A stretch of 64,000 bases of DNA from Zootoca vivipara (Eukaryota). Made by a program: the position numbers and the translations under genes. Shown piece after piece: positions 11,480-52,692 of this stretch. Within the stretch, counting starts at the first letter, position 1. Every line of letters begins with the position of its first letter. The notes under the pieces were generated by a model, which saw only the letters and a list, made by a program, of their open reading frames with translations, made no database searches and was not told where the DNA came from. The stretch lies in assembly GCF_963506605.1 (NCBI RefSeq), contig NC_083284.1, positions 20,708,001 through 20,772,000 of the forward strand. The letters run 5' to 3'.

Positions 11480-13300
11480 ACTCACCTGTGGCAGCATCAG
11501 CAGCATCCCTGGCCAGGCTCTCCATCACCGGTGCTCCACAACGAAGCGCATAGTGGTGCCGTCGAAGGAAGGAGGCGCGATGATCCTGGGCCCCAGAGGC
11601 TGCGAGTTGATGCTGATGAGCGGCGCCTTCCCCTCGCCAGGAACCCCTTGCTGCTGCTGTGGTGGCTGCTGTGGCTGCTGCTGCTGAGCAGCTTTGCCCG
11701 TGGGCATGTAGTAAGGGCTGTCCGCCCCGGGGCTGGTGGGACCGAGCTCTCCGCCCGGCTGCTGGGCAAGCTGGCCCTGCAGGGCGCTGGCAGGCAAGAC
11801 CGCAGGCAAGAAGCCCGGGTAGATCATGTAGGCCGCGGCAGGGGCACCGTAGGCTCCCCCCGCGCCCAGTGCCAGGGAGGACACTGGGAGGGTCATGGGG
11901 GCCACGGCCGGAGGTTGCGCCTGGGCCGGCAGGGGCACCTCCACGTACTGCCCGGTCTCGGGGTCGAAGAGGCGCCTCTTCTGAGGCGGCTGCTGCTGCT
12001 GCAACGGAGCGTCCACCACGTAGCACTGCCCGGTGCTGAGGTCCAGCAGCACTTTGCGTTGCGTCTGAGGCGCCGGGAAAGCGGCAGGCTCGGCGGCCGC
12101 GGGCGGAGAGAAGCACAGCAGAGGTGCGGGCTGGGCAGCGCCCGAGAAAGCGGCGAAGGACAAGGCCTGAGGGAAGAGCTGCGCGGGGGACACTTCGAAC
12201 TGAGGCGGCTGCTGCGGAGGATGGGCGGCCTGAGGCTGCGGGGCGGCTGCCTCTCCTCGCTGCTGTTGCTCGGCCGCCTCCTGCCCATGGGTCTTGCCGG
12301 TGCTGTAGGGCTGGTGGCTGCACAGGGCCGCCGCTGCCGCCGCCGCGGACAGTAGGCCCGGGCGGCAGCCTCGGTCTCCTGACGCGGCTGCCCCCGGTTG
12401 CTCCGTCGACGACGCCTTCAGAGGGATGGCCAGGTAGTTCCCGCAGTCAGGAGCCGCGGCAGTCGCCACCTTGGGGACCCTATCGGGCTCCACGAGACTC
12501 CCCTGCCTGTCCCCAAAGAGCTTGATGGAGCGAGGCCCGGCCTGGCCTTTCAGGCCTCTTGGTGGCGGATCAGGAGATGGCTGAGGCTGCTGCTGCTTGG
12601 CCTTCTGGGCCTGGGCATTGAAGGTGAAGGTGTTGCGGGGTGCCACAGGGGCCCTGCCTCTCTCCGTGCCCCCTGCGGCCTCCCCATGGAAGCCTGGCCC
12701 GCGTGCCCGCTCCCGAGCCTGTGCCAAGCTTTCGAAGGTCGCCATCTTGGCTGACACCTTCTCTGTGTTCTTGGTTGGGTTGGCATTCCGGCTGCGGGGT
12801 TGACGCTCGGGCGCAGCCCTGCTGCTGGCGATGCTGCTGGGGGAAGTCGTCAAGGCCGCACTCTGACTGGCATCCTGGTCCTCTCCCTTGTCGCCGGCCG
12901 TGGACTCGTCCCTGGATCCCGTGGCTGTGGCTCCCCCGGTGGTCCTTTCCTCGCTGGCGATGAGGGACAGGACATGGCTGTCGGTGATGGGCAGCGGGTC
13001 GCTCTTGCGCTTCCACTCGTTCTTGTGGAAGCTGTAGAGCTCCTCCATGCTCCGGACGGCCGCTGTAAGTTTCTCCAGAGCTTGGTGGTTCGCTGTGAGG
13101 GGTGCCTTGGCCACCTCTTCTCGTGGAATTTCTTCTTCACTAGCCACCGCCAGTGGGCTTACCTTGCTGCTTTTCTCCACTGGCATGGGTTGAATGGGCG
13201 GTGGTGGCGGTGGTGGCGGCTGTGCTTGCTGCCTCCAGGGCACAGATGTTTTGGACACTATCTTCAGCACAGCAGGCTGGCGAGGGTCGCTTTTGTTAGG
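11480..13300. promoter_or_regulatory. Intragenic CpG-island-like segment over the 3' third of the CDS
   Basis: Very high GC and CpG density compared with the rest of the same exon and the window. Confidence 0.7.
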
Positions 13301-16300
13301 GGCAATTGTAGCTACGGGCAGCCTCCCTGAGGTCCTGTGCACCAGGATTGTCCCATCTTGGCTGGATGGCAGCATCTTGCCCCCGCTACTTGCTTTGGCC
13401 CCTGTCTCTGAAACCATGCTGGCCCTCTTGTCTTCCTTGCTGTTGCTTACTGCCTGACAGGTTATCACCATGGGAGACAGAGGCCTGGAAATGCCTGCTG
13501 TCACCAGCCGCTTGGGTTTCTGCTCAGATGTTCCCTGGTCAGAGTTGACACTGCCTCTGTCACTGTTGTTATCCCCCGACTCGTGGCTATAGCTACTCTT
13601 AATTAGTTTCCTGACATCTGTAACCTGATGGATAGGCCCTTGCACCTTGTGTTTGTTTTCTCTTACATCGCGTACCAGGAATTGAGGCACTTTGTCCGTA
13701 CCTTCCCCTTTGAATTGTTTTTGCTGCTGGCCTCTGGTATCTTCAGCTGCCTTGAAAAAGTTTGGGACACTTCCAGATAGCTTGGGTGTGAGGAGCTTAG
13801 CAATATTGAAAGGGTGATCTTTATTTTGCTGCATGCTACCCAAACTGATCTTGATCTCAGGAGGTTTGGGCTTTATCATTGTGGTAGCGATGGCAGTCTG
13901 AGCCGCTGTGTTGGTTGCTGTAGAATATTTTGTCACTTGTGTGCTGGATTGCTTTTCTTTGGTTGTTTGTTGAATATTTGGGACAAAGAGACGAGACATT
14001 TTAGTTGATTTGCTGGCTGAGAATTCTCCCAAATCAGCCTTCCAGTCACCTTTGGAGGAATTTTTCAGTTTTCCCACAGGAGCTTTCTCCTCCTTTTTCT
14101 CTGCTTCTTTTTCTTTCCATGTTCTAAATGCACTGTTCTGGCTGCGGAGAAAAGTTGCCTTGAGAGTTTCAGAAGCACTCTCTTTTATTTTACATGCCTC
14201 TTCTAAGAGTGTTTCAGAAAGGGATCGATCCAGGCTAATATTTCCCTCCCGGGGAGTAGATGGCTTGGAGGTAGGGGACTTGCTGTCAAAAAACTCCCCC
14301 AAATCATCTGCTGTTACAATAGTGTAATCAGAGCTGCCTTCTGAATATCTAGAATTCTGTCTCTGCAAACCCCCATCCCTTAACTTTTCTTTGAAAGCAC
14401 CATCTACCTCTTTAGAAGATAAGGAATTGGACATACCAGAATATGTGGTGTCCGAGAGTTCGCCCCTTTCCATTTTGAATTCATGCTCCAGTTGCATTTT
14501 CTTTGAGATAACATTTTTAAGGAGACTAGATGCAAACTTTGATTTATTCTGTGTGCCTTCCATGGTTTCTGCAGCCAGCCCAGTTTGTTTGCAAGTTTCA
14601 TTGCCCAGCTCCTTTGGCAGTGTTTCTGTAACTTCATCTGTGCAACTTGATCCAGCAGCAGCATTTTCAGAAGGTTTAGCAGGTCTGGGGACACCCGCTT
14701 TTATATTGCTGCTAAAATTCAGAGTCTCCAACAAAGTAACAACCCGGGAGCCTGACTGGATCCGTTTTTCAAAGCAAGGCGGTGTCTCAACATGCGTTAT
14801 TTCCCCATCAAGCTTGCTGACAACAAACTCTAATGCTTTAGTCTGTGACTTATTGGAGTGAATGTAGAACTGGTCACTGGATGTCTTTGTCCCAGTGCTT
14901 CTGTTCCATCCTGCAGATGCGGTGCTGCTTTTGAAAAGATTTTGCTCTGCTTTCTGCCCAAGGCTGCCACACTTTAAATCCAAGTAAGTTGACCACCGGT
15001 TGATTCCTAGTGTGTGATCCGAAAGAGATGTGGAGGATTCACTGGAGCTCAAGTTCAAGGTATCAAAGTAGGGATAAGCTAAGCTGCGGAATGCCCTTGC
15101 TGTCAGGCTTCTTACTTCTTTATCTGCATCATCCAACTCACTTACCACGCTTGAGGCACCGCTTGAATATCCTCCCAATTCTCTTGCTCTTATGGCTCCA
15201 CACCTAGTTTGCAAACGTGCAGGAACTGCAATAAATTTTTTTGCATAGTCATGAAACACATCTTGTTTCAAACTTGAATTTCGTTCATGAGCTGTAGAGA
15301 CACAGAGGCTCATGTCGCCTTCATGCTTGGCAGCATAAATAATGTTTTGCTTTTCGTGCTGGTTGCTAGGCTCATTTATAGCCCTGGAAGTAGGTTTGAT
15401 TGATAGGAGTATCTGGCCTGCCGAATTCTCACTCATGTTGCTGAGGTTCTTGGACTGACTTTCTTCCGAGCTGGCGCATTTGTCTGTGCTAGGGGTATCA
15501 TTTTCAGAATTAATGCTGACTATCTCTTTACTGCTGGTATTATCGATACTGTCTGTCCGATTATTGGGATCACTAGTGGTCGTGCTGAGATAACAGCTAT
15601 TGTCCTCTTCTGTCTGGGTATCCGCAAGAGTCTCGTCACTCCCAAAGGAAGCGTAATCCACAAAGGAATAAATCACGTTGTTGTCCTCGAAATCCCACCG
15701 AGAGGCTAACCCATAATCAAAGTCCATGTCATGGTCCACTTCGCTAAGCTGGATTTCATGGGTTGTAATATAATGTGCTTCATCGTTATTGTTACAGTTG
15801 TTCTCACTGGTGTAGCTTTGCTGTGAGTGCATCAGTTGTGAAGCACGCCTGCACCCTCCTCTCTGGTTACTAAGACAGATTTCTTTGCAGTCTGCATCAT
15901 CGTCCTCATCACTTTCATATCCAAATGAAGAAGAGGAGGTTTTCCCCTCCGTTCCCATGTCATCCATTTTTGGAAAGCTGCCTGTCTCTTGTACTGGCGA
16001 AGGACAAGAGGATGAGGATGATTCTGGGCAGCCATTTGTGTAAAGCTGAATGTTGGAGATACTAGGGGACAAAGTGTTCTCAGACCCTTCTGAGCTGTTG
16101 CGAGTGATGCTTCCCCCCACCTCATCAGCCTTCATCCCCACAGGGGAAGGAGTGCCTTCCATTTTAGATTTATAATCCTGAGGTGCTTCATTTGCAGATT
16201 TGTCTGCCAGAATATTGTTAGCCAATCTGTTAACCTCACTGATCCCATAAGGTCCATTTTTAGGTTTGATAAAGGCCACTTTACTTCCATTCCCTGCCAA

Positions 16301-16492
16301 AGTCAGTTTTAGAGCTCGGGGACTCTCTCCCCTCCCTCCAGGGAAATCATAAATCTCCACATATTTTGATTCCTCAGATGAGGATGTTGATGGCTCTTGA
16401 GAATGGTGCTTCATCATTCGGCTGTTGCTTTCTCCAGCATTCCCTTTTTGAGTGATGATCGGCTCAGCAGGCGATTTTGTAAGCAGTTCCAT
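11525..16492 (-). CDS. C4orf54: C4orf54 orthologue (DUF4585-domain protein, ~1655 aa), single coding exon
   Basis: Uninterrupted 5-kb ORF with blocks I recognise from C4orf54: [88 protein letters not shown], the DUF4585 motif [18 protein letters not shown]...[15 protein letters not shown] (~11930-12065) and C-terminal [22 protein letters not shown]. The track start (16501) is GTG; the first ATG is at 16492 in strong Kozak context (GGA ATG G). Confidence 0.95.
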   Translation of the reverse strand: [1655 protein letters not shown]

Positions 16493-16555
16493 TCCGATCA
16501 CTGCAAGTTGACTGAAGGGAACAAAGAGATTTCGACCAAGACTCGAAGCTGGGAG

Positions 16556-24014: not shown

Positions 24015-24855
24015 CACTGGAATTGAGGATGCCTTCCTTGGAGACACTCCTGTGGAAACGTGTTTTTAGCTATTGGTTAACACTTAGTTGGTCTCTAAGG
24101 TGCTACTGGAAGCAATTTTTTTATTTTTTGTTTCGACTTTGGCACAGATTACCTAATTATTATCTAGCCCAATGCTTATGGCGTGATGAGTTTACTGGCC
24201 CTTTTTGGAATTTCACCATTAGAAATTCTGAAGTATGATCTTACGACAGCAAAAAAGATTATTACCCAAAGATTGGACGATATAGAGATGCAACGCCCAA
24301 ATGTTCTCCGCGACATTTGGGCGTTAATCCTTCATTTCATGTGCCAGCTTACTTATCATCCCTTCCTATTGCCACTCATCGTTTTGCTTTTATTAAGGCA
24401 TGTTTTAATGTCTTCCCCTCAAATGTCCTCCTTCACAGATTTTCTAAGGGCCAAGTTTCGGTTTTATGTGCCTGTGATAACTCCTTGATTGAAACCCTGC
24501 AGCACATAGTGTTTATATGTCCTTTATATTGTGCTGTCCGTAAGAATTTATTGCTCCCACTAATTCAAAAACTCCCCAGGCATCTGGAAGAATCTCACCT
24601 TGCTTTTTTATTGCAAGACACAAATCCGTTTGTAACTCTACAAATGGCAAAAAAATTAACTTCTGTTTTGACATATAAGAGACAGAATGGATTGTTATAT
24701 ACAACTTGAAATTCTTTTATTATATCCTTATCTAATTCTGTATATCCTTTTAAGCTATTTTACCTTTTAATTGTAAATCAAATTGTGCGTGTTTCTGTTC
24801 TTGTTTTATTATGTCTATGAGCTTAAAGCTGAAATAAAGTGATTTGGATTTGGAT
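24015..24855 (+). mobile_element. 5'-truncated non-LTR retrotransposon (RTE-X-like) inserted into a CR1 fragment
   Basis: C-terminal zinc-finger-like CACDNSLIETLQHIVFICPLY; AATAAA and (GGATTT)n tail; ~24-bp TSD with 2 mismatches (23991-24014 and 24856-24879). Clade assignment tentative. Confidence 0.75.
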
Positions 24856-32580: not shown

Positions 32581-34403
32581 GCCATATGTTTCTGGTTGTG
32601 CACTCTGAGAGCAGACTGCTGGACTAGGTGGTCCTTTGGTCTGATCCAGCAGGGCTCCTATGATCTTATTTAGAGATTTGTGCCATCAGTGGAAAACTGG
32701 TCAGGGCTGAAGAACTGATGCTGAACCCTTCAAAGTGCCCCTTGGCTTTTCGCTGATGCGTAACGGTAGATGTTGACTGAATTTCATGCGCTGTTGCAAA
32801 TTCTCCACTTCTCGTTAGCTTTATCTGAGATCCGGTTCACATAACCCTTTGCACTTCTTGGCATGGGAGCTGATCCGTGCTATTGCTGCATTGCAGTGGA
32901 CACTCATTGAAGCGGTTGACTAATTGCTTCACCACATGGCCAGGTGGCCCATCAGCTTCTGATCAGCTGAGGGTAAAAATACATACCTCATCACAAGCTG
33001 TCCACCCGCATCTTAGAACCAAAGGGGAGGGGATCGTGGCCTTGGGTTACTTTGAAATGTTAAAGGGGAAGGGGGAGAACAGGATGGAAAATGTCAGCTT
33101 TTTGATTAAAAAGACCTGTTCACACATACACCCAAGCATACCCACACCAGCAAGTCCAGATGAACTGTGTTAAGTGGGCGGGGGGGGGGGAGCTTCATTC
33201 CAGTATACCATGATCCTAATTATATATCCATTTGCCAGGCTTACATTGAAATGTGTATTTAATGCCCCATGTATTTAAATCACATTTAAAGCACCCCCCA
33301 CAGAGCTACAGTTCCCAGCACCTTTAACTAACTGCAGTTCCCAGGACACTTTAGGGGTTACTTTTAATGTATGGTGTGTATGCAACCACAGTAAGCAGAA
33401 ATCAGAATTTTCTGTAAGAGAAACACTTAGGAGTGTGAAATACCTGAAAGCTACAAAAGGGCTTAGAAAAGTCACAAGGCAGAGTTCTCTGGCAGGGTGA
33501 CTGAATCATATTGTACAGCTCTCTGGGAGCACAGCGCCAGATGTTTAAGGTTCCACAGGTATCTCTTTCAAGTACCTGTTTCAAGGACACCTACCTTTCG
33601 GAGGTATCGCTCATCACACATGTTACATCATTTTTTTTGCAAAGCGGCACACAGGGATGGCCACTAGCCATCACATCTTCAGAAGCCTCCAAGTGGCAGT
33701 AGCAGCAGCCGTAGTAGTAGTCAGAATTGACAGGTAGGTACCACAGGACCCATAGCCAAACCTGTTCCAGCTCTTCCAGTGCCATAGCTTGCACTTGCTT
33801 ACTGAATCATTTACTCTCTCTCACGGAAGGAAACAGTGCAGTAACCAGTAGGCCTGCATTTCCTTGGCAGTAGCCACTAAGGAACTGCACTATTACTGCA
33901 CTATTACTCTTGTATCTGTGCTAGAGATAGGGATATAAGAAAGCATCCTTTCCTAGTCTGCCTTGCATTCATCCCACACATCACTGCTTCCGTTATGCTG
34001 CAGTTTGTCTTCTGCCAAAAACTATGTTATTTGCCTCTCCGTCTGTTTTGGTGAAATTACGTAAGTTACCTAATTATCTATGTAAATTATGTTGCCGTTA
34101 GGTTATTCCACCCTATGCATTTCTGTGCAAAAGAAACAGAATGCAGCGGAAACATAATCAGTTACGGTACATTATCATTTGTGGACTGAAAGCAACAACA
34201 GCCAATAACAATGTCCGGCATTAGTTGAACTGGTTTCTGTTTTGCACCTTGGATGAATTAGTGAACAATTTCCACTGCTTCTTTCTGTTTTCATCTGAAT
34301 TCTCTTAGCTTCTCTAGCTAGAAAACAATAAGTTGCCTTCTCAGACAAAACAAGTGGGATTGCAGCACCAACCAACAAATACTAAAGCTTTCTTTCCTCA
34401 GAG

Positions 34404-34602
34404 GTAGGTAGCCGTGTTGGTCTGAGTCGAAGCAAAATAAAAAAATTCCTTCAGTAGCACCTTAAAGACCAACTAAGTTTATATTTTGGTATGAGCTTTC
34501 GTGTGCTCATACCAAAGCTCATACCAAAGCACACGAAAGCTCATACCAAAATATAAACTTAGTTGGTCTTTAAGGTGCTACTGAAGGAATTTTTTTATTT
34601 TG
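34404..34602. mobile_element. Penelope-like pLTR fold-back insertion, copy A
   Basis: Perfect 75-bp inverted arms (34433-34507 and 34528-34602); TSD TTTCCTCAGAG (34393-34403 and 34603-34613). Confidence 0.85.
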
Positions 34603-36627
34603 TTTCCTCAGAGGGCTCTTGTGAGCCTCAGTTCAAGCTCCAGGCATGGGTCCGACAGACCTTTCACATGTAGTTTGTACCTGTCTGCCCTGGCCGTTCA
34701 TGAGGTTGAAACTGGCTGTATGAATGGGTGATTCAGCTCTATGAACAACAACTGCTTGGGAGCAGGGGACTGAGAAGCAGATTTGAGATACAGAATTCAC
34801 CATATTGGACATGTTTTCATTCCTGGATTTGTACAGGAATCAGGTCCTTTACTGTCCAGCCTTGAGTGGCTGGCAGCTCTATCTTCTAGTCTAGAAGATT
34901 CTTACTTTAATTCAGGGATGGGGAACCCTCCCCCCGCCCATGTTGGACTCACCATTCATAGTCCGGGGTGGTGGGAAGTGGAGTCCAATTACATCTGGAG
35001 GCCCAAAGGCTCCTTACGCCTGTTTTAATTCTTTCTGTAGAAAGGAGGTGGGATAACAGGATAATGAAATCACATCACCAAGGCTTCAGCTACTAATTAT
35101 GAAAAGGGAATCCTTGGTTTTTCTTTGTTTTATTATTCTTTATAACTTGGACAATTTATATACCACTTTTATTTAAACAAATCTCTAAGTGGTTTATAGC
35201 ACAGGTTAAGACATAATAAATAAAATAAACAGATGCAAAAAAGCCCAGAAAACCTCCATATTCTGTATAGCACAATTAAACACTAAATAACGTATTTTCT
35301 TTAGCATCAAAATAAAAATGTACCTAATGCTACAAAAATACATAGAAAAGTTCACATTGAAAAATACAATAAGCAACTAGGCATAATTTTATCTAAACAT
35401 CATTACAAGTGAAAACCTACAAATTCCACATTTTTAAATAACTGGATAAAATAAAACCCAAGCATCATATGCCCAATCATTCATAACAATTAGACAAGTG
35501 AATCCAATTAAATTCTCAACCCCCTTTACAGCAATAAAAGCCAATTTGATCTAATTACAGTATGGTTAAAAATGCATTCTATAGAGTTCTGCTCAAGTAC
35601 ACACTCACAACATGTAAACATGTAAACTCTCTAAACCAATATACTCAAACTTACTATTCTAACACACCGTCAAACCCCTCCCATACTTTAATCTTACATT
35701 CTCAATCAACAGCCCACTCACATAGCTATACTGTGAAACATGGATAAATCTGGACAAATACTGACTCACTTGCCAGCAGGGGTTTCTATCCCCAGTAGCC
35801 TGTTGGATTAAAAAACAAAAACCACTTTCTCCAACCTTCTAGATAGGCCAGGCAATAATACTTCACCTATTCTCACCTTTAAAAAAGCTACTATAAAAAA
35901 TAGTGCCTTGTACAAATACCACAGATTTTGCCTGTCTCTCGCCTGAGGGGCCAAAAGCTTTCCTGTGGGCATGTGTGCTTAGGACTGCTGAGAGGTGATG
36001 GGGGGGGGGGGTTAAGAGAGAAATATGCCAGCAATTCCAGGAGGTCTCAAGTGAAAGTTCAGTGTCCTTAATTGGCTTGCTAATGGTCTTTTGCTCTGCT
36101 GCTTCTAAATCAGTCTCCTGCATTCGGTTGCTTTCAAATTTTCTTCACAGTGTAAGAGATGAGCTGTTCTTTCGTGGAAGATTAATTCCCAAGGAAACAG
36201 GAGGCACAGTTACCTAACCAAAGACCAAACAGGGCTCTTGCAAAAAGAAAAGAAAAGAAAAAAACAACTGGATAATTTAACAACAACAAAAATTTAAAAA
36301 CAAAAAAAAATATTACTGATTGATGGTGATCCAAACCATACCATAACTGCATTTTGTCATCTGTAATTAACCAAAGGTGATCTGGCGGTTCACAGGGCTT
36401 GTAGTGCATGCAATAGATCTTGATGCTAGCCAGCATCTTGGGCTTGTCCACATGATGCTGGACTGGCAGAACACTGCATGGAAGAACTAGGGAGTGTTTT
36501 GCTATATTTGAATAGGTGGCTCCTGAGAAGGTAAATGCAACCTTATTTTTATAAGGAGCAAGAGACTAATTTCTAAGACTTCCGTGACCTCAGGACAAAA
36601 CGGGAATTTTCTGCTATGTATGGAGAA

Positions 36628-36760
36628 GGGCTGTAGCTCAGTGCAGAGCATTTGCCTTGCATGCAATCCCAGGGACCTCCAAGTAGCAATGGGAATATTC
36701 CCTACTTTAAAAGCCATGGAGAACTACTGCTGGCCAGTGTAGACAATACTGAGCTAGACA
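36628..36760 (+). mobile_element. tRNA-derived SINE remnant
   Basis: A-box head GGGCTGTAGCTCAGTGCAGAGCAT; body GAACTACTGCTGGCCAGTGTAGACAATACTGAGCTAGA. Confidence 0.7.
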
Positions 36761-36788
36761 ACCCATCTTATATGCTTATGCTCTTAAC

Positions 36789-36924
36789 CAGGCATCCCCA
36801 AACTTCGGCCCTCCAGATGTTTTGGACTACAATTCCCATCTTCCCCAACCACTGGTCCTGTTAGCTAGGGATCATGGGAGTTGTAGGCCAAAACATCTGG
36901 AGGGCCGCAGTTTGGGGATGCCTG
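36789..36924. mobile_element. hAT MITE (136 bp)
   Basis: TIR CAGGCATCCCCAAACT; TSD CTCTTAAC / CTGTTAAC. Confidence 0.9.
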
Positions 36925-37129
36925 CTGTTAACCTTCCTTTTCCAAGCTCATACTCAGTATAAGGCAGCTTCCTGTATTCTTATGTTCCTGTGAAAAGACC
37001 CAATTTCTTATACTCACTACTCTAACTGATCTTTGTGGTTCTAGTTACAGGTAGGTGTTGGTCTGAGTCAAAGCAAAATAAAAAAAAATCCTTCAGTAGC
37101 ACCTTAAAGATCAACTAAGTTTTTATTTT

Positions 37130-37164
37130 GGTATGAGCTTTCGTGTGCATGCACACTTCTTCAG
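37130..37164 (-). ncRNA. Hammerhead motif with intact catalytic core but lacking the 5' strand of stem I
   Basis: Minus strand CUGAAGAAGUGUGCAUGCACACGAAAGCUCAUACC, preceded by GAUAC instead of GGUAU. Confidence 0.7.
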
Positions 37165-37203
37165 GTATCTGAAGAAGTGTGCATGCACACAAAAGCTCAT
37201 ACC
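37164..37203 (+). ncRNA. Minimal type I hammerhead ribozyme motif (G12->A in this copy)
   Basis: GGUAU-CUGAAGA-A-GUGUGCAUGCACAC-aAAA-GCUC-AUACC: stem I GGUAU/AUACC, conserved core, palindromic stem II and palindromic AGCU stem III. Confidence 0.75.
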
Positions 37204-39684
37204 AAAATAAAAACTTAGTTGATCTTTGTGATGTGCATGCAAACTGGGCCCAGCAGGTTCATACAAGAGCAAATGGTTATACAAATATCCTCATCCCAAA
37301 CTATTTAGGGCAAAAGGGATTAAACACCCTGCCTGGGAGGCTAATCTGCCCCCCCATTTTTTTACCGCATCAATTTTGGCAATGGCTTTCCTGTATAATG
37401 TGCTCCACCCCCACCCCACCCCCGCCATTTACGTCTTGTTTGGGGGGTTGCCTGCGTGGGAGACAAGATTAACAATAATTATCTAGAGAAAAACCACATA
37501 AAAGTCCCATGGATTTGCATTTGCTATAAATACAAACTTTATGGGTGGGAGGGATCTCAACTGCTATACTGGAACTCCTGCTGCTGCTGTTCTCAGTGAA
37601 GGTGAGAACAGATGTGCCTCACACCAGAGGTGGTGTTATCCTCTCCCTGGCATTGAGATGCAGACTTCCCCATTCAAGAAATGCATGCGCAGAATTGCAC
37701 ACTCTCTCCACTAAAGCAAGTGAGCACTCTTGTGCTTGCAGTGATAGTAAAGATGGAAACGACAGTGCCCCTGAGGGCAACCAAGTGGGTGGTTAATTTT
37801 ATTCATTCACTTATCTGAGCATTTACAAATGGGTAACTCGTTTTTAAAATGTCACAGTGGTGAAGAAAAAATAATAATAATGAAAACATCAAAAACATTA
37901 CAACATCATACAGTTCAGAACAAATGACCAATATGATGAAGATCTTCTATAGCAGGGCTTAAACATCAGCATATGAATCTGTGCTGTGCTTTAGGCTTAA
38001 AGCCACATTGGAAAGTCAGTTGGCTATTAAGAATCCTCCCTTCTAAAAAGTCACAGCTTCCAGAATATGGTCGTGGGATCACTACCATTCAGCTGAGAGA
38101 TGTAATGGTGCCCTCACTGGTGGCTGGTGCTGGTGCTGGTGCTGGGAATGGGTGGTGCTGGGAATGGGTTACTCTTTTTAAATGGTATTCATAACACTTT
38201 GATCCCATTCTTTCTCCCAGGGAGCTAAAGGTGCCTCCTCATTTATCCTCTGAAAGAACCTTGAGAGGTAGATTAGGCTGGGAGAAGATACAGTAGGTGG
38301 TACAAGTTCACCCATGGAACTTCGTGGCTCAGCAGTAGGCCTCATCCGTCGTAATACAATACTCTGATCTATCCACACTGGCTCTCAACAGCCCTTGCAT
38401 GCCTTTGAGCTCTTTCATCGTAATGTGGGGTACCTTTAACTACAACTTGAATAAAGGACTAAAGGTGAGCGTGGAGTTGTGTATCTGGTTTTAATCTGTT
38501 ATCCTCGTCTGGGAAGTATAGATTAGATCGGTCTGTGCAGGTATCACTAAACAAGATTTTCAACAGCCCTTGTCGTCATGGAAGGACCGGTCATACCACC
38601 AGGCAAAAATGAGGCAACTGACCCAAGTAGCTCCCTCCCGAGCCCCTCGCCATACCCCCATCATTGGCTATATACCCCCTAAACTACTGGGCTGCTTCAG
38701 GTGCAGTGGAAGATGCTATCCGTTTGCCAGTGCTGAAATAAGATTCAACTGCCAATCCAGTCAATGCTCGGCAAGGAATTGGGTGGAGAGGAAACACTAT
38801 CATGTCCCTTGCTTCAGGCAGCACAAATGTCTCATGCCAACTCTGGCCTAATCCAGCAGGCTCTTCTTTTGTTATTATGTTCTCTCCCCTCTTGATTTGG
38901 ATCCAAACCATTCCTGGGATTGCATGGGGGAAAGGATGCTACATCAGCTTGCCCTCCACACAAAGTATGGCCATTCAGTAAGCAACATTTTTTTACCTCC
39001 TTGGGGGAGTGTTTTTGTCTTAATTGATGAGGAATGCCAGGTTCAGATCTTCCTTCCTGCCCCTCTCACAAACAAGCTAAGTTTAGGTTGTTGTTTGGAA
39101 CCATACACTTGTCTGCTAGACACGTACAAGTATAAAGAGATCTGTAACCTTTCCTTAGTGTGGAGGACCCTGAGGTCTAAAGAGGGTTGCTGTTTAATTT
39201 AGCATGGCACTGCTTTTCTCAGCACCCGTCCTGTTCATATATATTGCTTAGTGACATTTGGGCATGAGGAAAGATTTGGCCAGTCGTGATTTGGAACCAC
39301 TTCTTGCTCATTCAGAATCAGTCTTGTGGTTTGTGAATGATCTGTGCAGAAGGGAAGACATTTGGGTGCCTTGATTTTCATGAGAAGGAATCATGAGCTG
39401 GGGTATTGAAACTTGTTCATACTTGTTTTTGGGGGATCAGAGCCAGTTAAAGTTGATTTGATGTTTTATAAGACTAGCAACATCTGCACGGAAGCCATCT
39501 GGGAAACAGTTTAGGCAGGGAGATAACTTATATTGGTATGTTGTGAACTATATTGAGAGCTGGGGTAGGGTAGTCTTTAGAGTCTATTCCACAAACAACT
39601 GGATTAAAATCCCCACTTAACTCTGGAGCTCACTGAGTTGCCATGGACCCATCTCTCAGCCCAAGCTGCTTCACAGGGTTGTTA

Positions 39685-40228: not shown

Positions 40229-40753
40229 AATTAAAGCGGATTAAAGTTCTCTGTCACACACACACACACACAACCACTTTTTTAAAATGACTTTTTGCAG
40301 GGAAATGCATTAGAAAGTGTGGTATGATTAGCAGGAAGACATATGAACACCCCACAAACCAATCAGGGAGAATTCTGGTTTCAGTACTCTTTGTACCTGC
40401 AGAAGTTTTGGGGCAAACATACTGTATTGTCCTGTAACTTCCTACTAAAATCATGTAACTTTTCATACCACAAATGTTCCGTGTCGGGGTTGTTGTTTTT
40501 ACCTGCTTTGGTTGCAGTATAGTGATAGCGTTCCTCCAGATGCCAACAATGTGGTAACACTGAGGATGCACTGCAGTACAACTAATAAAGCAGAATGATG
40601 TTGTGGAGACCCAAGTCACAAATGTACTATTACTGTGTCAGTGACATAACCATAAATCTGGAGGAGCCCATAAGTTTTGTGCAAACAAATCAAGATAAAT
40701 GCTCAATAAACAAGTTGTCTGGAGAAGCTCCACAAGGAAGCCATTGCTTAGGT

Positions 40754-40889
40754 CAGGCATCCCCAAACTTCGGCCCTCCAGATGTTTTGGACTACAATTC
40801 CCATCTTCCCGGACCACTGGTCCTGTTAGCTAGGGATCATAGGAGTTGTAGGCCAAAACATCTGGAGGGTCGCAGTTTGGGGATGCCTG
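40754..40889. mobile_element. hAT MITE, same family as 36789-36924
   Basis: TIR CAGGCATCCCCAAACT; TSD GCTTAGGT. Confidence 0.92.
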
Positions 40890-42926
40890 GCTTAGGTGAA
40901 TGCAGGATTTATGAGTTGAATGGTGAACTTAATAAACTTCCAAGAGAAAGGGGGCACTGGAAAGTCCAGATAAAGGAGTTGGGATGCCCTTTCCAACAAC
41001 ATGCAAGGAAATAATTGCAACAGTTGAGCTATCAGTAAACACCTTCAAGAAGCTTAAATCAAAATACCAGATATTGCAGGTTCTCCAATACCCCCCTTTT
41101 AGCCCCTTGAATCCTATAGATTTCAGCAACTGAAATTAAACTTGTTGACTTCAGTACCAAGATCTGAAGCTGGATCTCTTTTCCAGGAGGCTGAGCCAGT
41201 GCAACATTTTCATTCTTGACACCAAATAAAACCTGCATCCAAATTCACCCGCCAGGTTTTCTTCACACATTTGCTGTTGACTGCTATCTTTATTTTTGCA
41301 CTTCTGAGCCATCATCTCCAGACTATTTTGGACTTGTAAGTTGTTCTGGACCACTGTGGTGGGGTAGGGGGGGAATATATTGACTAATAAAAACAAATTT
41401 TATCACCTGCAAAATATGAGATAGATTAAATGCTCATATGAAATCTTCTGAGGAGATCTTCCTCTCTCATCCAGATTGAGTTACTGTAAAGTCTTTAGGT
41501 GTAGGCTTGCCAGAAACTCTGCTACACCATTTGCAGTTGGTTCACAAAGTATCCTGTGTTTTCATCTGACCAAGAAAAGAAGCATTTCCTTTTTAACTCT
41601 TCTAATGGAGTGGGAATCATCCAAATTTGGGATTATGTCTGGAAAAGTGAACCCTAAAGTTGCACCATTGCATTGTATGAACCTCCGACTGTCACTATTT
41701 TGGAGTGAGATTCAGCTATATTGGTTGCCTCTTTGTTACTGGGCTCCATTGAAAGGCCTGAATGCTCTGAGATGAGCGTTCCTTGAGGAATATCTCCTCC
41801 TGCATGCACCTGCCTGACTCAATTAGATCTACACCAGAGCTCCTGCTTCATGTTCTCCTACAGCCTGAAGTTCAGCAGGTGGATATAAGAGGCAAGAGCC
41901 TTTTCCTTCAGCTACTGCAACGTGGGCTGTCGAATGCCATCCTTAGCAAGGCCTGTCCGGCTTCTTCATTCTTCTGCTTTTGCCATATAGAGAACAGCTG
42001 GAATTTGGGGATCTGGCACATGGACTTGTGAGCGTGGTGGCCACTTATGTATCTCCCCACCCCCACCCCAAAAGGAAATGGATCACGCAGGGAAAAGGAT
42101 TTTTCATCACCAAACATTTGTCTATGCTAAATTTATATCTACAGATACTTGCTACACTTTAAATGGAAATACATTACACCTCACCAGAGTGGGGAAGGCT
42201 GTGACCAGGCGACTTGGGAAGCAACATTCCTGTATCACTTGGTGTTCACTCTTGATGGGCAGCTTCAGGGCTTTTCCTGCTCTTCTTCATCTTTAAACTG
42301 GACTCGACAGCCATTCAAACAGAGGACCATTCTTTGTAAAGTAGGACGCATGGCTGCCCTGATTGTCAGCCTTGTTGCTCTTCTGTTCTTCTGAGTGGTC
42401 TTTTGTTTAATTGTTGGGTGATTAATTCATCTATTAAGCTATCGTCCCTAACTGATCAATTAACACATGGGAGCAAGTAAAAACCCAACTGATTGATTGT
42501 TCCTGACCCTGTGTTTTAAAGCCTGCCTGGTCCCTTTTGAAACTCTGGGCTGTCTGTTTGTGTACTTCCAAATAATTTCACTGTTCTTTGGATTTTGTGA
42601 ATTGGTGTGTGTGTGTGTGCGCGTGTGTGCTGCCTTGGTTTTCTTTTGAAAGAAAGACATGCTCTTCTATCTTATTTAGGAGTATTTTGTTTGTTTGTTA
42701 CATTTATGCACCACCTTTTCCTCCAAGGGACTGAAGGTGATGTGTATGCTCCATCTCTCCCCAATTTTATCTTCACAACAAACCTGTGAGGTAGGCTAGG
42801 CTGAGAGGTAGTCACTGGCCCAGGCTTGGTGGGGCTTGGTCCTAGTCCAACACATTACCCCACACTAGTACCCACTAACTGAAGTTTCTGAGGTGCCTTA
42901 CAATATATTTAAAACACAATAAACCA

Positions 42927-51290: not shown

Positions 51291-51553
51291 GGTATTGACA
51301 ACTGGAATGTGTGCAGAGGAGGTCTGGAAACCAAGCCTAATGAGGAATGGTTAAGGGATATGGGGTATGTTTAGCTTGGAAGAGAGGAGGCTGAAAGGAG
51401 ATATGATAGCCATCTTCAAATATCTAAAGGGCTGCCACATGGAAGATGGAGCAAGCTTGTTATCTCCTGCTCCAGAGGGTAGGACCAGTACCAGTGGATT
51501 CAAGTTACAAGAAATGAGATTCTGACTAAACATCAGGAAGAACTTTCTGACAG

Positions 51554-51733
51554 GTAGGTAGCCGTGTTGGTCTGGCGCAGTCAAAACAAAATAAAAAAAA
51601 TCCCTCCAGTAGCACTTTAGAGACCAACTAAGTTTGTCATAGGTATGAGCTTTCATGTGCATGCACACTTATACCAACGACAAACTTAGTTGGTCTCTAA
51701 GGTGCTACTGGAAGGATTTTTTTATTTTGTTTT
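51554..51733. mobile_element. Penelope-like pLTR fold-back insertion, copy C, nested in CR1
   Basis: 13-bp TSD AACTTTCTGACAG (51541-51553 and 51734-51746); inverted arms; partial hammerhead. Confidence 0.88.
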
Positions 51734-52692
51734 AACTTTCTGACAGTAAGAGCTGTTAAACAGTGGAATGGACTCCCACAGAAGGTGGTGAACTCTCTTT
51801 CATTGGATGTTTTAAGCAGATGTTGGATGGCCATCTGTAATGGATGCTTTAGTTGGATTCTTGCATTGCAGGGGGTTGGACTAGATGACCCTAGAGGTTC
51901 CTTCCACCTCTAGAATTCTATGATTTTATGGTTCCTGGCTGGGGCTGATGGGAATTGGAATCCAACAACATCTGGAGGGCTATGGGTTACCCATCCCTGT
52001 TCTAGACTCTGAGAGGATATCATGGACCAAGCAACTTTCTGAGGTGAGCCCGTTTCCTCACTCCATTGATCCTAAAGGTGGGGATTTGGAGGAGCATCTC
52101 CTCCCCCATTGTATCAGCCTGGACACTGAGGTCCACCTCTGGGGGCCTTCTGAGAGAACCCTGGGAGTTGTAGTTTACTCTCCACAGAACTCTTAGTTAG
52201 CACCCTTGGCAAACTACAGTGCTTGGGATTCTTTGGGGGAAAGCCACGTGCCTTAAATGTATGGTGTGGTCTGGATGTGACCCAAGTCTCTTTACTGATC
52301 AACCTCTGCCAGTCATCATGGAGGGTCATCAGTAGGAGATGCTTTAGTTGCGCCCTCCATTGGTGAGCCTGTATTGAGCAGGAGGTTGGGCTAGACAGAG
52401 ACCTTCTAACTCCACGATTGTGCCCTGTAAATATGTTTGTTGCTTTCTAGTGGCACTGGTTGTTATGATGGATGCACCTGGCACCCTCACTTTTCTCTTT
52501 CCAAGGAATAACCTCTCAGATAAACTGTGCCTTTGGGATGGAGGCCAACAAATCTCCTGCTGCTAGAAAGCCGTGTGTCAGTACAGATTGAATTTTGGTT
52601 GGTATTTGAAGCACGATGTACTTAGATGATCAGGCCTCAAGCTAGCCCTGTGAAATTTCACCCTCGATCGGAAGTACTTAGCAAATGTACAG

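What the first reader, a model, noticed from the sequence alone, without database searches (positions are those of the whole stretch)
37048..37227. Mini fold-back retroelement carrying head-to-head minimal hammerhead ribozymes
Seen: a 59-bp inverted repeat centred on a 40-nt motif GGUAU CUGAAGA A GUGUGCAUGCACAC (G)AAA GCUC AUACC. It has the hammerhead core (CUGANGA / GAAA / UH), a 5-bp stem I, a perfectly palindromic 14-nt stem II, and only AGCU for stem III. The plus copy keeps stem I but has G12->A at 37191 (a CpG transition). The minus copy keeps the full core but has lost the 5' strand of stem I. Established: Penelope-like elements carry minimal type I hammerheads with a palindromic vestigial stem III that act as dimers. 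Inference: this is a non-coding, ribozyme-bearing mobile unit of ~180-200 bp with predicted cleavage CUC^AUACC. Three recent and two old relatives occur in 64 kb, implying a very high genomic copy number.
Basis: partly seen in the sequence, partly recalled or inferred. Interest (0 to 1): 0.85.

Follow-up and report, generated by a model that had tools for sequence, protein, structure and literature searches.

The report
Head-to-head Penelope-type mini-insertion with dead hammerheads
This is one ordinary, non-coding insertion of a very abundant Penelope-like retrotransposon fragment: two short copies laid down head-to-head in one event, each carrying a minimal hammerhead ribozyme motif that is already disabled, so it is a clean example of a known kind rather than a new mobile element.

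Summary
Arms 37106-37164 and 37169-37227 form a 59-nt inverted repeat with one mismatch, and each arm carries a minimal type I hammerhead motif.

The Penelope-like (PLE) family assignment is supported. The motif has the published PLE "min-HHR" traits. Three fold-back copies in the window (e37, e34, e51) sit inside exact 11-13-bp target duplications. One arm of each carries a one-sided 24-30-nt tail. The distance from cut site to distal end (85-93 nt) matches the reverse-transcription start mapped for Anolis Poseidon (85-92 nt), whose protein nicks and extends both strands.

Two parts of the reading fail:
- The fold-back is not the mobile unit. The arm junction differs in every copy, so each hairpin was made anew at insertion.
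- The two hammerheads cannot act as a dimer. They lie on opposite strands, so any transcript folds into a -107 kcal/mol hairpin.

Neither ribozyme here is complete: the plus copy has G12A and the minus copy lacks helix I. RNA reads show no ends at the predicted cut sites.

No RT/GIY-YIG partner lies in the window, and helix covariation could not be tested. The scan had already reached the same reading for this family elsewhere in this genome. Interest is low.

The parts
37027..37037 (.). Left copy of the 11-bp target-site duplication TGATCTTTGTG
   Evidence: Exact direct repeat with 37220-37230. Sequence.
37038..37049 (.). 12 nt (GTTCTAGTTACA) between the left TSD copy and the end of the tail. 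Origin unknown: untemplated, or template RNA beyond the tail.
   Evidence: No counterpart in e34 or e51, where the TSD abuts GTAGGTAGCC.
37050..37073 (-). One-sided tail. The sense reading is CUUUGACUCAGACCAACAC..CUACC. It is AC-rich and marks the distal reverse-transcription start. This copy is 6 nt shorter than the family.
   Evidence: Alignment A1. Reads put GTAGCT/GTAGCC back in behind 37054 (table 4). The right arms of e34 and e51 lack this segment.
37050..37164 (-). Left arm: an antisense copy of the unit, running from C3 of the hammerhead to the distal RT start (30 nt 5' and 85 nt 3' of the predicted cut site).
   Evidence: (nhmmer E 7.7e-27).
37130..37164 (-). Minus-strand hammerhead motif with an intact core (C3 at 37164, G12 at 37142, C17 at 37135, predicted cut 37135|37134). 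It lacks the 5' strand of helix I.
   Evidence: 0 mismatches. (the only strict descriptor hit, 0.005 expected). (monomer folds to helix II only).
37165..37168 (+). Spacer GTAT. It belongs to the right arm and, together with G37164, forms the helix I 5' strand GGUAU.
   Evidence: Family reads laid on the left arm continue with ATAC, the reverse complement of GUAU (tables 3 and 7).
37164..37203 (+). Plus-strand hammerhead motif with 5-bp helix I and helix II, but G12->A at 37191 (predicted cut 37198|37199).
   Evidence: 1 mismatch. (monomer -9.1 kcal/mol with helices I and II). Part of the family reads carry G at 37191 (table 3).
37169..37227 (+). Right arm: a sense copy of the unit that stops only 29 nt 3' of the cut site. 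Its last 8 nt (TGATCTTT) overlap the right TSD copy. The inferred cause is internal priming by microhomology.
37220..37230 (.). Right copy of the 11-bp target-site duplication TGATCTTTGTG
34404..34602 (.). Relative e34: a 199-bp head-to-head insertion inside the exact 11-bp TSD TTTCCTCAGAG (34393-34403 / 34603-34613). Arms are 74/74 identical and both are cut off inside helix II. Stuttered GCTCATACCAAA units sit between them. A 29-nt tail is on the left arm only.
   Evidence: period 12, 4 copies.
51554..51733 (.). Relative e51: a 180-bp head-to-head insertion inside the exact 13-bp TSD AACTTTCTGACAG (51541-51553 / 51734-51746). Arms are 92% alike. The left arm starts at A9. The right arm starts exactly at A1.1, the 5' end that ribozyme cleavage would leave. 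A 30-nt tail is on the left arm only.
24079..24150 (+). Relative e24: an older solo sense arm, 5'-truncated downstream of the hammerhead, with a diverged tail.
   Evidence: E 4.6e-15.

Best explanation
The stretch is one dead-on-arrival insertion of a Penelope-like-element (PLE) derived retroposon unit, laid down as two copies head-to-head.

**The unit.** The template RNA runs from the minimal hammerhead to the internal reverse-transcription (RT) start sites. That is about 35 nt 5' of the predicted cut site plus 60 nt (proximal start) or about 90 nt (distal start) 3' of it.

**How it was made (inferred).**
1. A PLE RT/GIY-YIG protein nicked both target strands 11 bp apart.
2. Both 3' ends primed cDNA on this RNA. 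The left end started at the distal site, which gives the one-sided tail. The right end started at an internal site with 8 nt of microhomology.
3. Both cDNAs ran to the 5' edge of the hammerhead.
4. The cDNAs were joined there.
5. Filling the 11-nt stagger gave the target duplication.

I think the template was a dedicated short (~130 nt) non-autonomous RNA (about 55%) rather than a heavily 5'-truncated full-length PLE (about 30%).

**What it does now.** At this locus it does nothing as a ribozyme. The plus copy has lost G12, the minus copy has no helix I, and any read-through transcript would fold into a 59-bp perfect hairpin that buries both motifs.

**Shown:** the anatomy, the target duplications, the tail, the copy-specific junctions, the hairpin, and the absence of local transcription in three RNA runs.
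**Inferred:** the double priming, the microhomology start, and the identity of the enzyme.
For: **1. The motif has the traits that define PLE min-HHRs** (PMC4209133): an unpaired base between positions 9 and 10.1, a G10.1-C11.1 pair, a palindromic 15.2-16.2 with no loop 3, and a short helix I. The published Anolis Poseidon_Ac hammerhead (CUGAGGA-U-helix II-GAAA-CG-UC) has the same build but a different sequence.

**2. The layout matches published PLE insertions.** These are 5'-truncated, with an adjacent inverted 5'-truncated copy and a 30-40-bp tail at one end only (PMC8557442). Here there are three such insertions, with 29-30-nt tails (24 nt in e37, which has a 6-nt deletion) on the left arm only.

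**3. The target duplications are exact and vary in length:** 11, 13 and 11 bp.

**4. The geometry matches experiment.** In Poseidon_Ac the cut site is 26 nt into the ORF. RT starts 111-118 nt in, which is 85-92 nt past the cut. There are two adjacent starts in an AC-rich region, the tail is the sequence between them, and the protein cleaves and extends both strands (PMC11167929). Here the distal end lies 85-93 nt past the cut and the proximal end 60-63 nt past it, and the tail is AC-rich (GACCAACAC).

**5. Each copy has its own junction,** and within-element arm identity (74/74, 58/59, 92%) mostly exceeds between-element identity (81-95%).

**6. The hairpin wins over the ribozyme fold.** The hairpin is -106.9 kcal/mol, z -18.7. 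The hammerhead monomer fold is -9.1.

**7. Reads.** Family RNA is seen on both strands at hundreds-fold depth, while the flanks have zero. 92-93% of laid reads run on into unlike sequence, so they come from other copies. No pile-up of molecule ends occurs at 37198/37199 or 37135/37134.

**8. A short template is suggested.** None of the 7 arms reaches more than 35 nt 5' of the cut site. Reads that continue past 37164 agree on ATAC and then fall to flank-like agreement (0.53, against 0.38-0.5 for true flanks) (table 7).
Against: - No RT/GIY-YIG ORF lies in the window, and none could be linked to this family with the collections at hand. The enzyme is therefore inferred from anatomy alone.
- Rfam's hammerhead models do not score the motif even at E <= 10. 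Published work needed relaxed descriptors for this class.
- The right end of e37 is atypical. The arm stops early, 12 unexplained nt lie at the left end, and a 12/14 match to the helix II palindrome sits just past the right TSD copy. The simple two-primer picture may be incomplete, or the target may have been an older relic.
- No covariation supports the helices, because the copies in the window are invariant there.
- Seven arms are too few to fix the 5' boundary of the template.
Confidence: 0.85

Rival explanations
1. One reading: the ~180-200-bp fold-back is itself a non-autonomous mobile unit. Its two head-to-head hammerheads cooperate as a dimer to process its RNA.
For: Three fold-backs of similar size (180-199 bp) lie in 64 kb. 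PLE hammerheads are thought to work as dimers (PMC4209133; PMC6765202).
Against: - Junctions differ in all three copies, and e34 and e51 have lost most of the ribozyme on both arms. A copied master would pass on one junction.
- The two motifs lie on opposite strands, so one RNA carries one sense motif plus its complement. It folds into a -107 kcal/mol hairpin.
- No copy in the window has a complete ribozyme.
Confidence: 0.04
2. The arms are heavily 5'-truncated copies of a full-length autonomous PLE transcript, not of a dedicated short RNA. They stop in the hammerhead because the stable helix II or bound protein halts reverse transcription. This is a variant of the best explanation.
For: - PLE insertions are typically strongly 5'-truncated (PMC8557442; PMC8969392).
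- In Poseidon_Ac the hammerhead lies at the pLTR-ORF junction, about 90 nt upstream of the RT start.
- Earlier notes report intact Neptune-type PLEs in this genome (unchecked).
Against: - All 7 arms end within about 50 nt of one another, and none continues upstream of helix I.
- Family reads lose agreement right after GUAU (table 7).
- The sense strand has a stop 11 codons after the only AUG in the hammerhead, so the region is non-coding here, unlike Poseidon_Ac.
Confidence: 0.3
3. It is a miniature inverted-repeat DNA transposon (MITE) that happens to contain a hammerhead-like palindrome.
For: It has long, near-perfect inverted repeats and a small size.
Against: - The TSD length varies (11, 13, 11 bp).
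- The outermost termini are not inverted repeats of each other (GTAGGTAGCC... against ...TTATTTTG), because of the one-sided 24-30-nt tail.
- The inner ends of the arms vary, while a MITE keeps its termini and varies inside.
- A solo arm with a tail exists at 24079-24150.
Confidence: 0.02
4. The hairpin has been taken over by the host as a small-RNA or double-stranded-RNA locus, such as a miRNA or endo-siRNA precursor or an ADAR substrate.
For: It is a perfect 59-bp hairpin. Below-threshold Rfam hits to hairpin miRNA families reach 52-66 bits against gathering scores of 79-100. RNA reads show an excess of A>G and T>C changes compared with the DNA run (table 1).
Against: - The Rfam hits are generic for any long hairpin, and all are far below threshold.
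- The unique flanks have zero RNA depth in three runs, so this locus is not transcribed there.
- The A>G excess is confounded by reads from thousands of other copies.
- No small-RNA data were available.
Confidence: 0.03

Closest known systems
Minimal hammerhead ribozymes of Penelope-like elements (Cervera & de la Pena 2014, PMC4209133; the dimer work of Lunse, Weinberg & Breaker 2016 is known to me only through the review PMC6765202)
   Same: - Type I topology with the CUGANGA / GAAA / UH core.
- An extra unpaired base between positions 9 and 10.1, and a G10.1-C11.1 pair.
- Helix III reduced to a 4-nt palindrome (AGCU), and a 4-5-bp helix I.
- Massive dispersal as single or opposite-strand pairs 100-700 bp apart.
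- Reported in reptiles (turtle, snakes) and characterised in Anolis.
   Different: - Helix II here is a perfectly self-complementary 14-mer. It folds as 5 bp plus a tetraloop, shorter than the 6-8 bp described.
- The two motifs are only 4 nt apart, and neither is complete.
- No activity or covariation data exist for this family.
PLE insertion architecture and mechanism: Poseidon_Ac of Anolis carolinensis (Frangieh et al. 2024, PMC11167929) and the general scheme of Craig et al. 2021 (PMC8557442)
   Same: - An inverted 5'-truncated partner copy and a one-sided ~30-nt tail.
- An AC-rich internal RT start 85-93 nt past the hammerhead cut site (85-92 nt in Poseidon_Ac), with two adjacent start sites.
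- Both target strands used as primers.
   Different: - The sequence family differs from Poseidon_Ac.
- Here the hammerhead-to-start segment is non-coding, whereas in Poseidon_Ac the ORF begins in helix II.
- No ORF or tandem pLTR is attached. The whole insertion is only 180-199 bp.
Metazoan non-LTR retrozymes (Cervera & de la Pena 2020, PMC7229834; Li, Clavereau & Pollet 2026 preprint, 10.64898/2026.07.22.740005)
   Same: They are short, non-coding, carry a type I hammerhead, are probably mobilised by PLE machinery, and leave dispersed solo monomers.
   Different: Retrozymes are defined by tandem direct repeats that yield circular RNAs. Here there is no tandem unit repeat, the copies are inverted, and no circular-RNA evidence was obtainable.
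Twin-priming inversions of LINE-1 (from my own knowledge: Ostertag & Kazazian 2001; not checked here)
   Same: One insertion event gives two oppositely oriented, 5'-truncated pieces of the same template inside one target duplication, because both nicked strands prime cDNA.
   Different: - L1 twin priming gives an inversion of adjacent template segments, not two copies of the same 3' segment.
- It has no tail and uses a different enzyme (APE/RT, not GIY-YIG/RT).

Membership tests
PLE minimal hammerhead (min-HHR) | Conserved core C3-U-G-A-N-G-A9, G12-A-A, U16.1-H17 | tested here: met
   Met in full by the minus copy 37130-37164. The plus copy fails at G12 (A at 37191).
PLE minimal hammerhead (min-HHR) | [quoted passage not shown] | tested here: met
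   CUGAAGA-A-G...C-GAAA, read. Criteria from PMC4209133.
PLE minimal hammerhead (min-HHR) | No real helix III; positions 15.2-16.2 are palindromic, so that two copies can pair | tested here: met
   A-GC-U followed by C17.
PLE minimal hammerhead (min-HHR) | Helix I of 4-5 bp closing the type I fold | tested here: inconclusive
   The plus copy has GGUAU/AUACC. The minus copy has none. No single copy in the window combines an intact core with helix I.
PLE minimal hammerhead (min-HHR) | Compensatory changes in helices I and II across family members | tested here: inconclusive
   The helices are invariant in the window's copies, apart from one CpG change in e51 that turns G10.1-C11.1 into G-U. No further copies could be fetched.
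PLE minimal hammerhead (min-HHR) | Self-cleavage at C17 | tested here: inconclusive
   No pile-up of read ends at the predicted sites in three RNA runs (table 6). Standard RNA-seq is a weak test. The right arm of e51 begins exactly at A1.1, but that is one of seven arms.
Penelope-like element insertion | Inverted 5'-truncated copy next to a sense copy | tested here: met
   e37, e34 and e51.
Penelope-like element insertion | 30-40-bp tail at one end only, between two RT start sites in an AC-rich region | tested here: met
   29-30 nt in e34 and e51, and 24 nt in e37 (6-nt deletion), always on the left arm. The distal end lies 85-93 nt past the cut site, against 85-92 nt in Poseidon_Ac.
Penelope-like element insertion | Target-site duplication from staggered nicks | tested here: met
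   Exact 11-, 13- and 11-bp duplications.
Penelope-like element insertion | Sequence continuity with an element that encodes a telomerase-like RT plus a GIY-YIG endonuclease | not testable with these tools
   No such ORF lies in the window. The genome itself is not searchable here. Earlier notes mention Penelope RT/GIY-YIG elsewhere in this genome, unchecked.
Non-LTR retrozyme | Tandem direct repeats of a hammerhead-bearing unit | tested here: not met
   There are no tandem unit copies. The only tandem array is the 12-nt stutter in e34.
Rfam Hammerhead families (e.g. Hammerhead_1) | Covariance-model score at or above the gathering threshold | tested here: not met
   No hammerhead match at the gathering threshold over the whole window, nor at E <= 10 on 501 nt or on 55 nt.
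MITE / TIR DNA transposon | Symmetric terminal inverted repeats at the very ends and a TSD of fixed length | tested here: not met
   The termini are asymmetric because of the tail. The TSDs are 11, 13 and 11 bp.

The most novel reading that the evidence does not exclude
The copies may record how the ribozyme shapes the template. All seven arm 5' ends fall in or next to the hammerhead. Family reads lose similarity right upstream of helix I. One arm (e51, right) begins exactly at the nucleotide that self-cleavage would expose, and e34 carries stuttered copies of the 12-mer spanning the cut site.

If a genome-wide census showed a sharp peak of arm starts at A1.1, and a second peak at the 5' edge of helix I, these mini-insertions would be a genomic footprint of in vivo hammerhead cleavage and of RT template-switching at the ribozyme in a vertebrate PLE. 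RNA-seq in Anolis failed to show that cleavage (PMC11167929).
Probability: 0.15. Interest if true: 0.55.

Novelty: new member of a known kind. Interest (0 to 1): 0.2.

Why it matters
As a single locus it matters little. It is a dead, untranscribed repeat copy.

As a class it has some use. Thousands of such two-armed mini-insertions are natural records of where Penelope reverse transcription starts (two sites about 30 nt apart) and stops (at the hammerhead). They also show that both target strands are used. A census of them could test, in vivo and at scale, the mechanism so far shown only in vitro for one Anolis element. It could also show whether the ribozyme ever cuts in vivo.

For annotators, these perfect hairpins break short-read assemblies. 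Contigs here end inside the arms (table 8). They also mimic miRNA precursors in Rfam-type scans.

Tried and rejected
**Rfam.** I ran the gathering threshold on the whole window, E <= 10 on 501 nt, and E <= 10 on the isolated plus motif. No hammerhead family matched. The only hits were sub-threshold hairpin miRNA families, which I take as generic hairpin matches.

**More copies from public collections.**
- A 27-nt degenerate arm pattern found nothing in metagenome or viral contigs.
- A 19-nt hammerhead pattern gave four metagenome hits. All are 19-24-nt chance matches inside GC-rich contigs with no similarity beyond the short match (apparently bacterial).
- So no covariation test and no link to an ORF was possible.

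**ORFs.** Pfam on the nine long ORFs outside the large exon gave no RT or GIY-YIG domain, only an Isy1-like piece.

**Dimer folding.** RNAcofold of two sense motifs pairs them through the palindromic helix II and helix I, not through AGCU. It therefore neither supports nor excludes the helix III dimer.

**Literature.** The dimer paper of Lunse et al. is not held. I cite it only through a review.

**Other readings considered and dropped.**
- A tRNA-like SINE reading of the antisense strand: the A- and B-box-like strings are only about 10 nt apart.
- A Pol III terminator reading of the T7 run: there is no promoter evidence.

**Steps not taken.**
Full report
**What is there.**
- The window reads like a vertebrate genome. 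The source organism is coded in the run table, and earlier notes of this scan call it a lizard.
- At 37106-37164 and 37169-37227 lies a 59-nt inverted repeat, 98% complementary, with the 4-nt spacer GTAT.
- Its inner part is the 35-mer CTGAAGAAGTGTGCATGCACACGAAAGCTCATACC. This is exact on the minus strand (37130-37164) and has one mismatch on the plus strand (37169-37203). No match occurred in 100 shuffles.
- Read as RNA, the motif has these parts:
  - CUGAAGA.
  - An unpaired A.
  - The self-complementary 14-mer GUGUGCAUGCACAC as helix II.
  - GAAA.
  - GC.
  - UC, then AUACC.
- On the plus strand, GGUAU (37164-37168) pairs with AUACC to give a 5-bp helix I, but G12 is A (37191, a CpG position).
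- On the minus strand the core is intact, but GAUAC stands where GGUAU is needed.
- A strict minimal-hammerhead descriptor hits the window once, at the minus copy, against 0.005 expected. With helix I required, nothing passes. So no copy in the window is a complete ribozyme.

**Relatives and anatomy.** BLAST and nhmmer find three further insertions:

| Copy | Insertion | TSD | TSD coordinates | Arm identity |
|---|---|---|---|---|
| e37 | 37038-37219 (182 bp) | TGATCTTTGTG, 11 bp | 37027-37037 / 37220-37230 | 58/59 |
| e34 | 34404-34602 (199 bp) | TTTCCTCAGAG, 11 bp | 34393-34403 / 34603-34613 | 74/74 |
| e51 | 51554-51733 (180 bp) | AACTTTCTGACAG, 13 bp | 51541-51553 / 51734-51746 | 92% |
| e24 | 24079-24150 (solo arm) | none identified | - | - |

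- All three target duplications are exact.
- In each fold-back, both arms are copies of the same sense sequence pointing outward. That sequence runs hammerhead, then AUACCAAAAUA..ACUUAGUUGGUCUUUAAGGUGCUACUG..UUUUUUUAUUUUG.
- The right arm ends there, 60-63 nt past the predicted cut site.
- The left arm goes on for another 29-30 nt, CUUCGACUCAGACCAACACGGCUACCUAC, to 85-93 nt past the cut site. So the two outermost ends are not inverted repeats of each other.
- The inner ends differ in every copy:
  - e37 joins C3 to the start of helix I.
  - e34 joins two arms cut inside helix II, through a stutter of GCTCATACCAAA.
  - e51 joins A9 to A1.1.
- Arms within one element are 98-100% alike (92% in the older e51). 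Arms of different elements are 81-95% alike.
- Each fold-back was therefore made at its own insertion from a linear template. The hairpin is not what is copied.

**Comparison with what is published.**
- Cervera and de la Pena (PMC4209133) defined minimal hammerheads in the terminal repeats of Penelope-like elements. They listed four traits that their search did not impose:
  - A base between positions 9 and 10.1.
  - A G10.1-C11.1 pair.
  - A palindromic 15.2-16.2.
  - Families rich in covariation.
  The first three are met here. They also noted a 4-5-bp helix I, pairs of motifs on opposite strands 100-700 bp apart, and occurrence in turtle and snakes.
- Craig et al. (PMC8557442) describe PLE insertions as 5'-truncated, often with an adjacent inverted 5'-truncated copy, and with a 30-40-bp tail at one end only.
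- Frangieh et al. (PMC11167929) reported the following for Poseidon_Ac of Anolis:
  - The protein cleaves and extends both target strands.
  - Reverse transcription starts at two adjacent internal sites in an AC-rich region, 111-118 nt into the ORF.
  - The tail is the sequence between those two sites.
  - The hammerhead cut site is 26 nt into the ORF.
- That puts the distal start 85-92 nt past the cut. Here it is 85-93 nt, the tail is 29-30 nt, and it contains GACCAACAC.
- The deposited Poseidon_Ac consensus shows the same ribozyme build (CUGAGGA-U-helix II-GAAA-CG-UC^A) with an unrelated sequence. So this is another PLE family, not Poseidon_Ac.
- Here the segment is non-coding: a stop follows 11 codons after the AUG in loop II.

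**Mechanism (inferred).**
1. A PLE enzyme nicked the two strands 11 bp apart.
2. The top-strand end primed at the distal start, giving the left arm with its tail.
3. The bottom-strand end, ...AAAGATCA-3', paired with UGAUCUUU inside the RNA and primed there. That is why the right arm stops 29 nt past the cut site and why its last 8 nt overlap the target duplication.
4. Both cDNAs ran to the 5' edge of the hammerhead.
5. The cDNAs were joined at CAG-GTAT-CTG.

- Both arms share the rare variant GAUC, where 333 of 334 family reads have GGUC at the left-arm position 37111. This fits one template RNA species for both arms.
- Three things are not explained:
  - The 12 nt GTTCTAGTTACA at the left end.
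  - The 12/14 match to the helix II palindrome at 37231-37244, just past the right duplication. The 10-mer TGTGCATGCA occurs in the window only inside element copies and there.
  - Whether the target was an older relic, since PLEs tend to insert next to earlier copies (PMC6765202).

**Function at this locus.**
- A transcript of either strand folds into a perfect hairpin (-106.9 kcal/mol, z -18.7). The hammerhead monomer fold is worth -9.1 kcal/mol.
- The published dimer needs two sense copies. Here one RNA has one sense motif plus its complement.
- G12 is the general base of the hammerhead (established knowledge), so the plus copy is expected to be dead. The minus copy cannot close helix I.
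- Three RNA runs of the same species give zero depth on the unique flanks.
- On the arms they give hundreds-fold depth in both orientations. 92-93% of those reads run on into unlike sequence, so they come from other copies embedded in other transcripts.
- No pile-up of molecule ends occurs at the predicted cut sites. Frangieh et al. likewise saw no such ends in Anolis.

**Template length.**
- None of the seven arms extends more than 35 nt upstream of the cut site.
- Reads that continue beyond the left arm agree on ATAC (the complement of GUAU, the helix I 5' strand). Agreement then drops to 0.53 overall, close to the 0.38-0.5 seen for true flanks of the neighbouring repeat (table 7).
- I therefore favour a dedicated ~130-nt non-autonomous RNA, from hammerhead to RT start, over random 5' truncation of a 3-kb element. 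Seven arms and one consensus line are thin evidence for this.
- The summed DNA word depth (~1e6 on the arms against ~20-40 on the flanks) fits a very large family, but the tool warns that it is not a copy number.

**Rivals.**
- A MITE is excluded by the variable duplication length, the asymmetric termini and the variable inner ends.
- A retrozyme in the strict sense is excluded by the lack of tandem unit repeats.
- A host small-RNA gene has only generic, sub-threshold hairpin hits and no local transcription.

**Limits.**
- No RT/GIY-YIG ORF lies in the window.
- The public collections at hand hold no copies. So the partner element and helix covariation remain untested.

**Earlier work of this scan.**
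- The scan had already followed up this family on other pieces of the same genome, with the same reading.
- I used those notes as leads only. The anatomy, duplications, tail geometry and fold were measured here.

**Verdict.** It is a new member of a known kind, of low interest as a locus and moderate interest as a class for a census.

Noticed in passing
window 36787-36926: Immediately upstream lies another small fold-back repeat, with arms 36800-36845 and 36868-36913 (46 nt, 89% complementary). It is even more abundant in the reads: summed DNA word depth ~5e6 against ~20-40 in flanks, and RNA depth in the thousands on both strands. Reads break sharply at 36787-36789 and 36924-36926, with CTAG-like letters beyond. 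It looks like a MITE-type element.
   Followed up: partly
window 34505-34550: Between the arms of e34 lie stuttered copies of GCTCATACCAAA (period 12, 4 copies). This 12-mer spans the predicted hammerhead cut site, and the pattern looks like repeated template slipping at a GC microhomology.
   Followed up: partly
window 51671: The right arm of e51 begins exactly at A1.1, the 5' end that hammerhead cleavage would leave, and is joined directly to the left arm at A9. One case in seven arms could be chance (about 1 in 8 by a rough estimate).
   Followed up: partly
window 37231-37244: ATGTGCATGCAAAC, a 12/14 match to the helix II palindrome, sits just past the right target duplication of e37. The 10-mer TGTGCATGCA is otherwise found only inside element copies (7 hits against 0.18 expected).
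   Followed up: partly
window 34000-38000 (read table): In the three RNA runs, A>G and T>C differences (20-27 places each) clearly outnumber C>T and G>A (7-12 each). In the DNA run they are about equal (12 and 9 against 6 and 10). This could hint at A-to-I editing of hairpin repeats, but reads from many copies confound it.
   Followed up: no
window 40595-41014 (+): A 139-aa ORF has an Isy1-like splicing-family match (Pfam PF06246, E 1.3e-07, profile positions 66-100 only). It may be an exon or a retro-copy fragment.
   Followed up: no
window 11525-16501 (-): A 1658-aa open frame, presumably the large coding exon that another first-stage note calls C4orf54.
   Followed up: no
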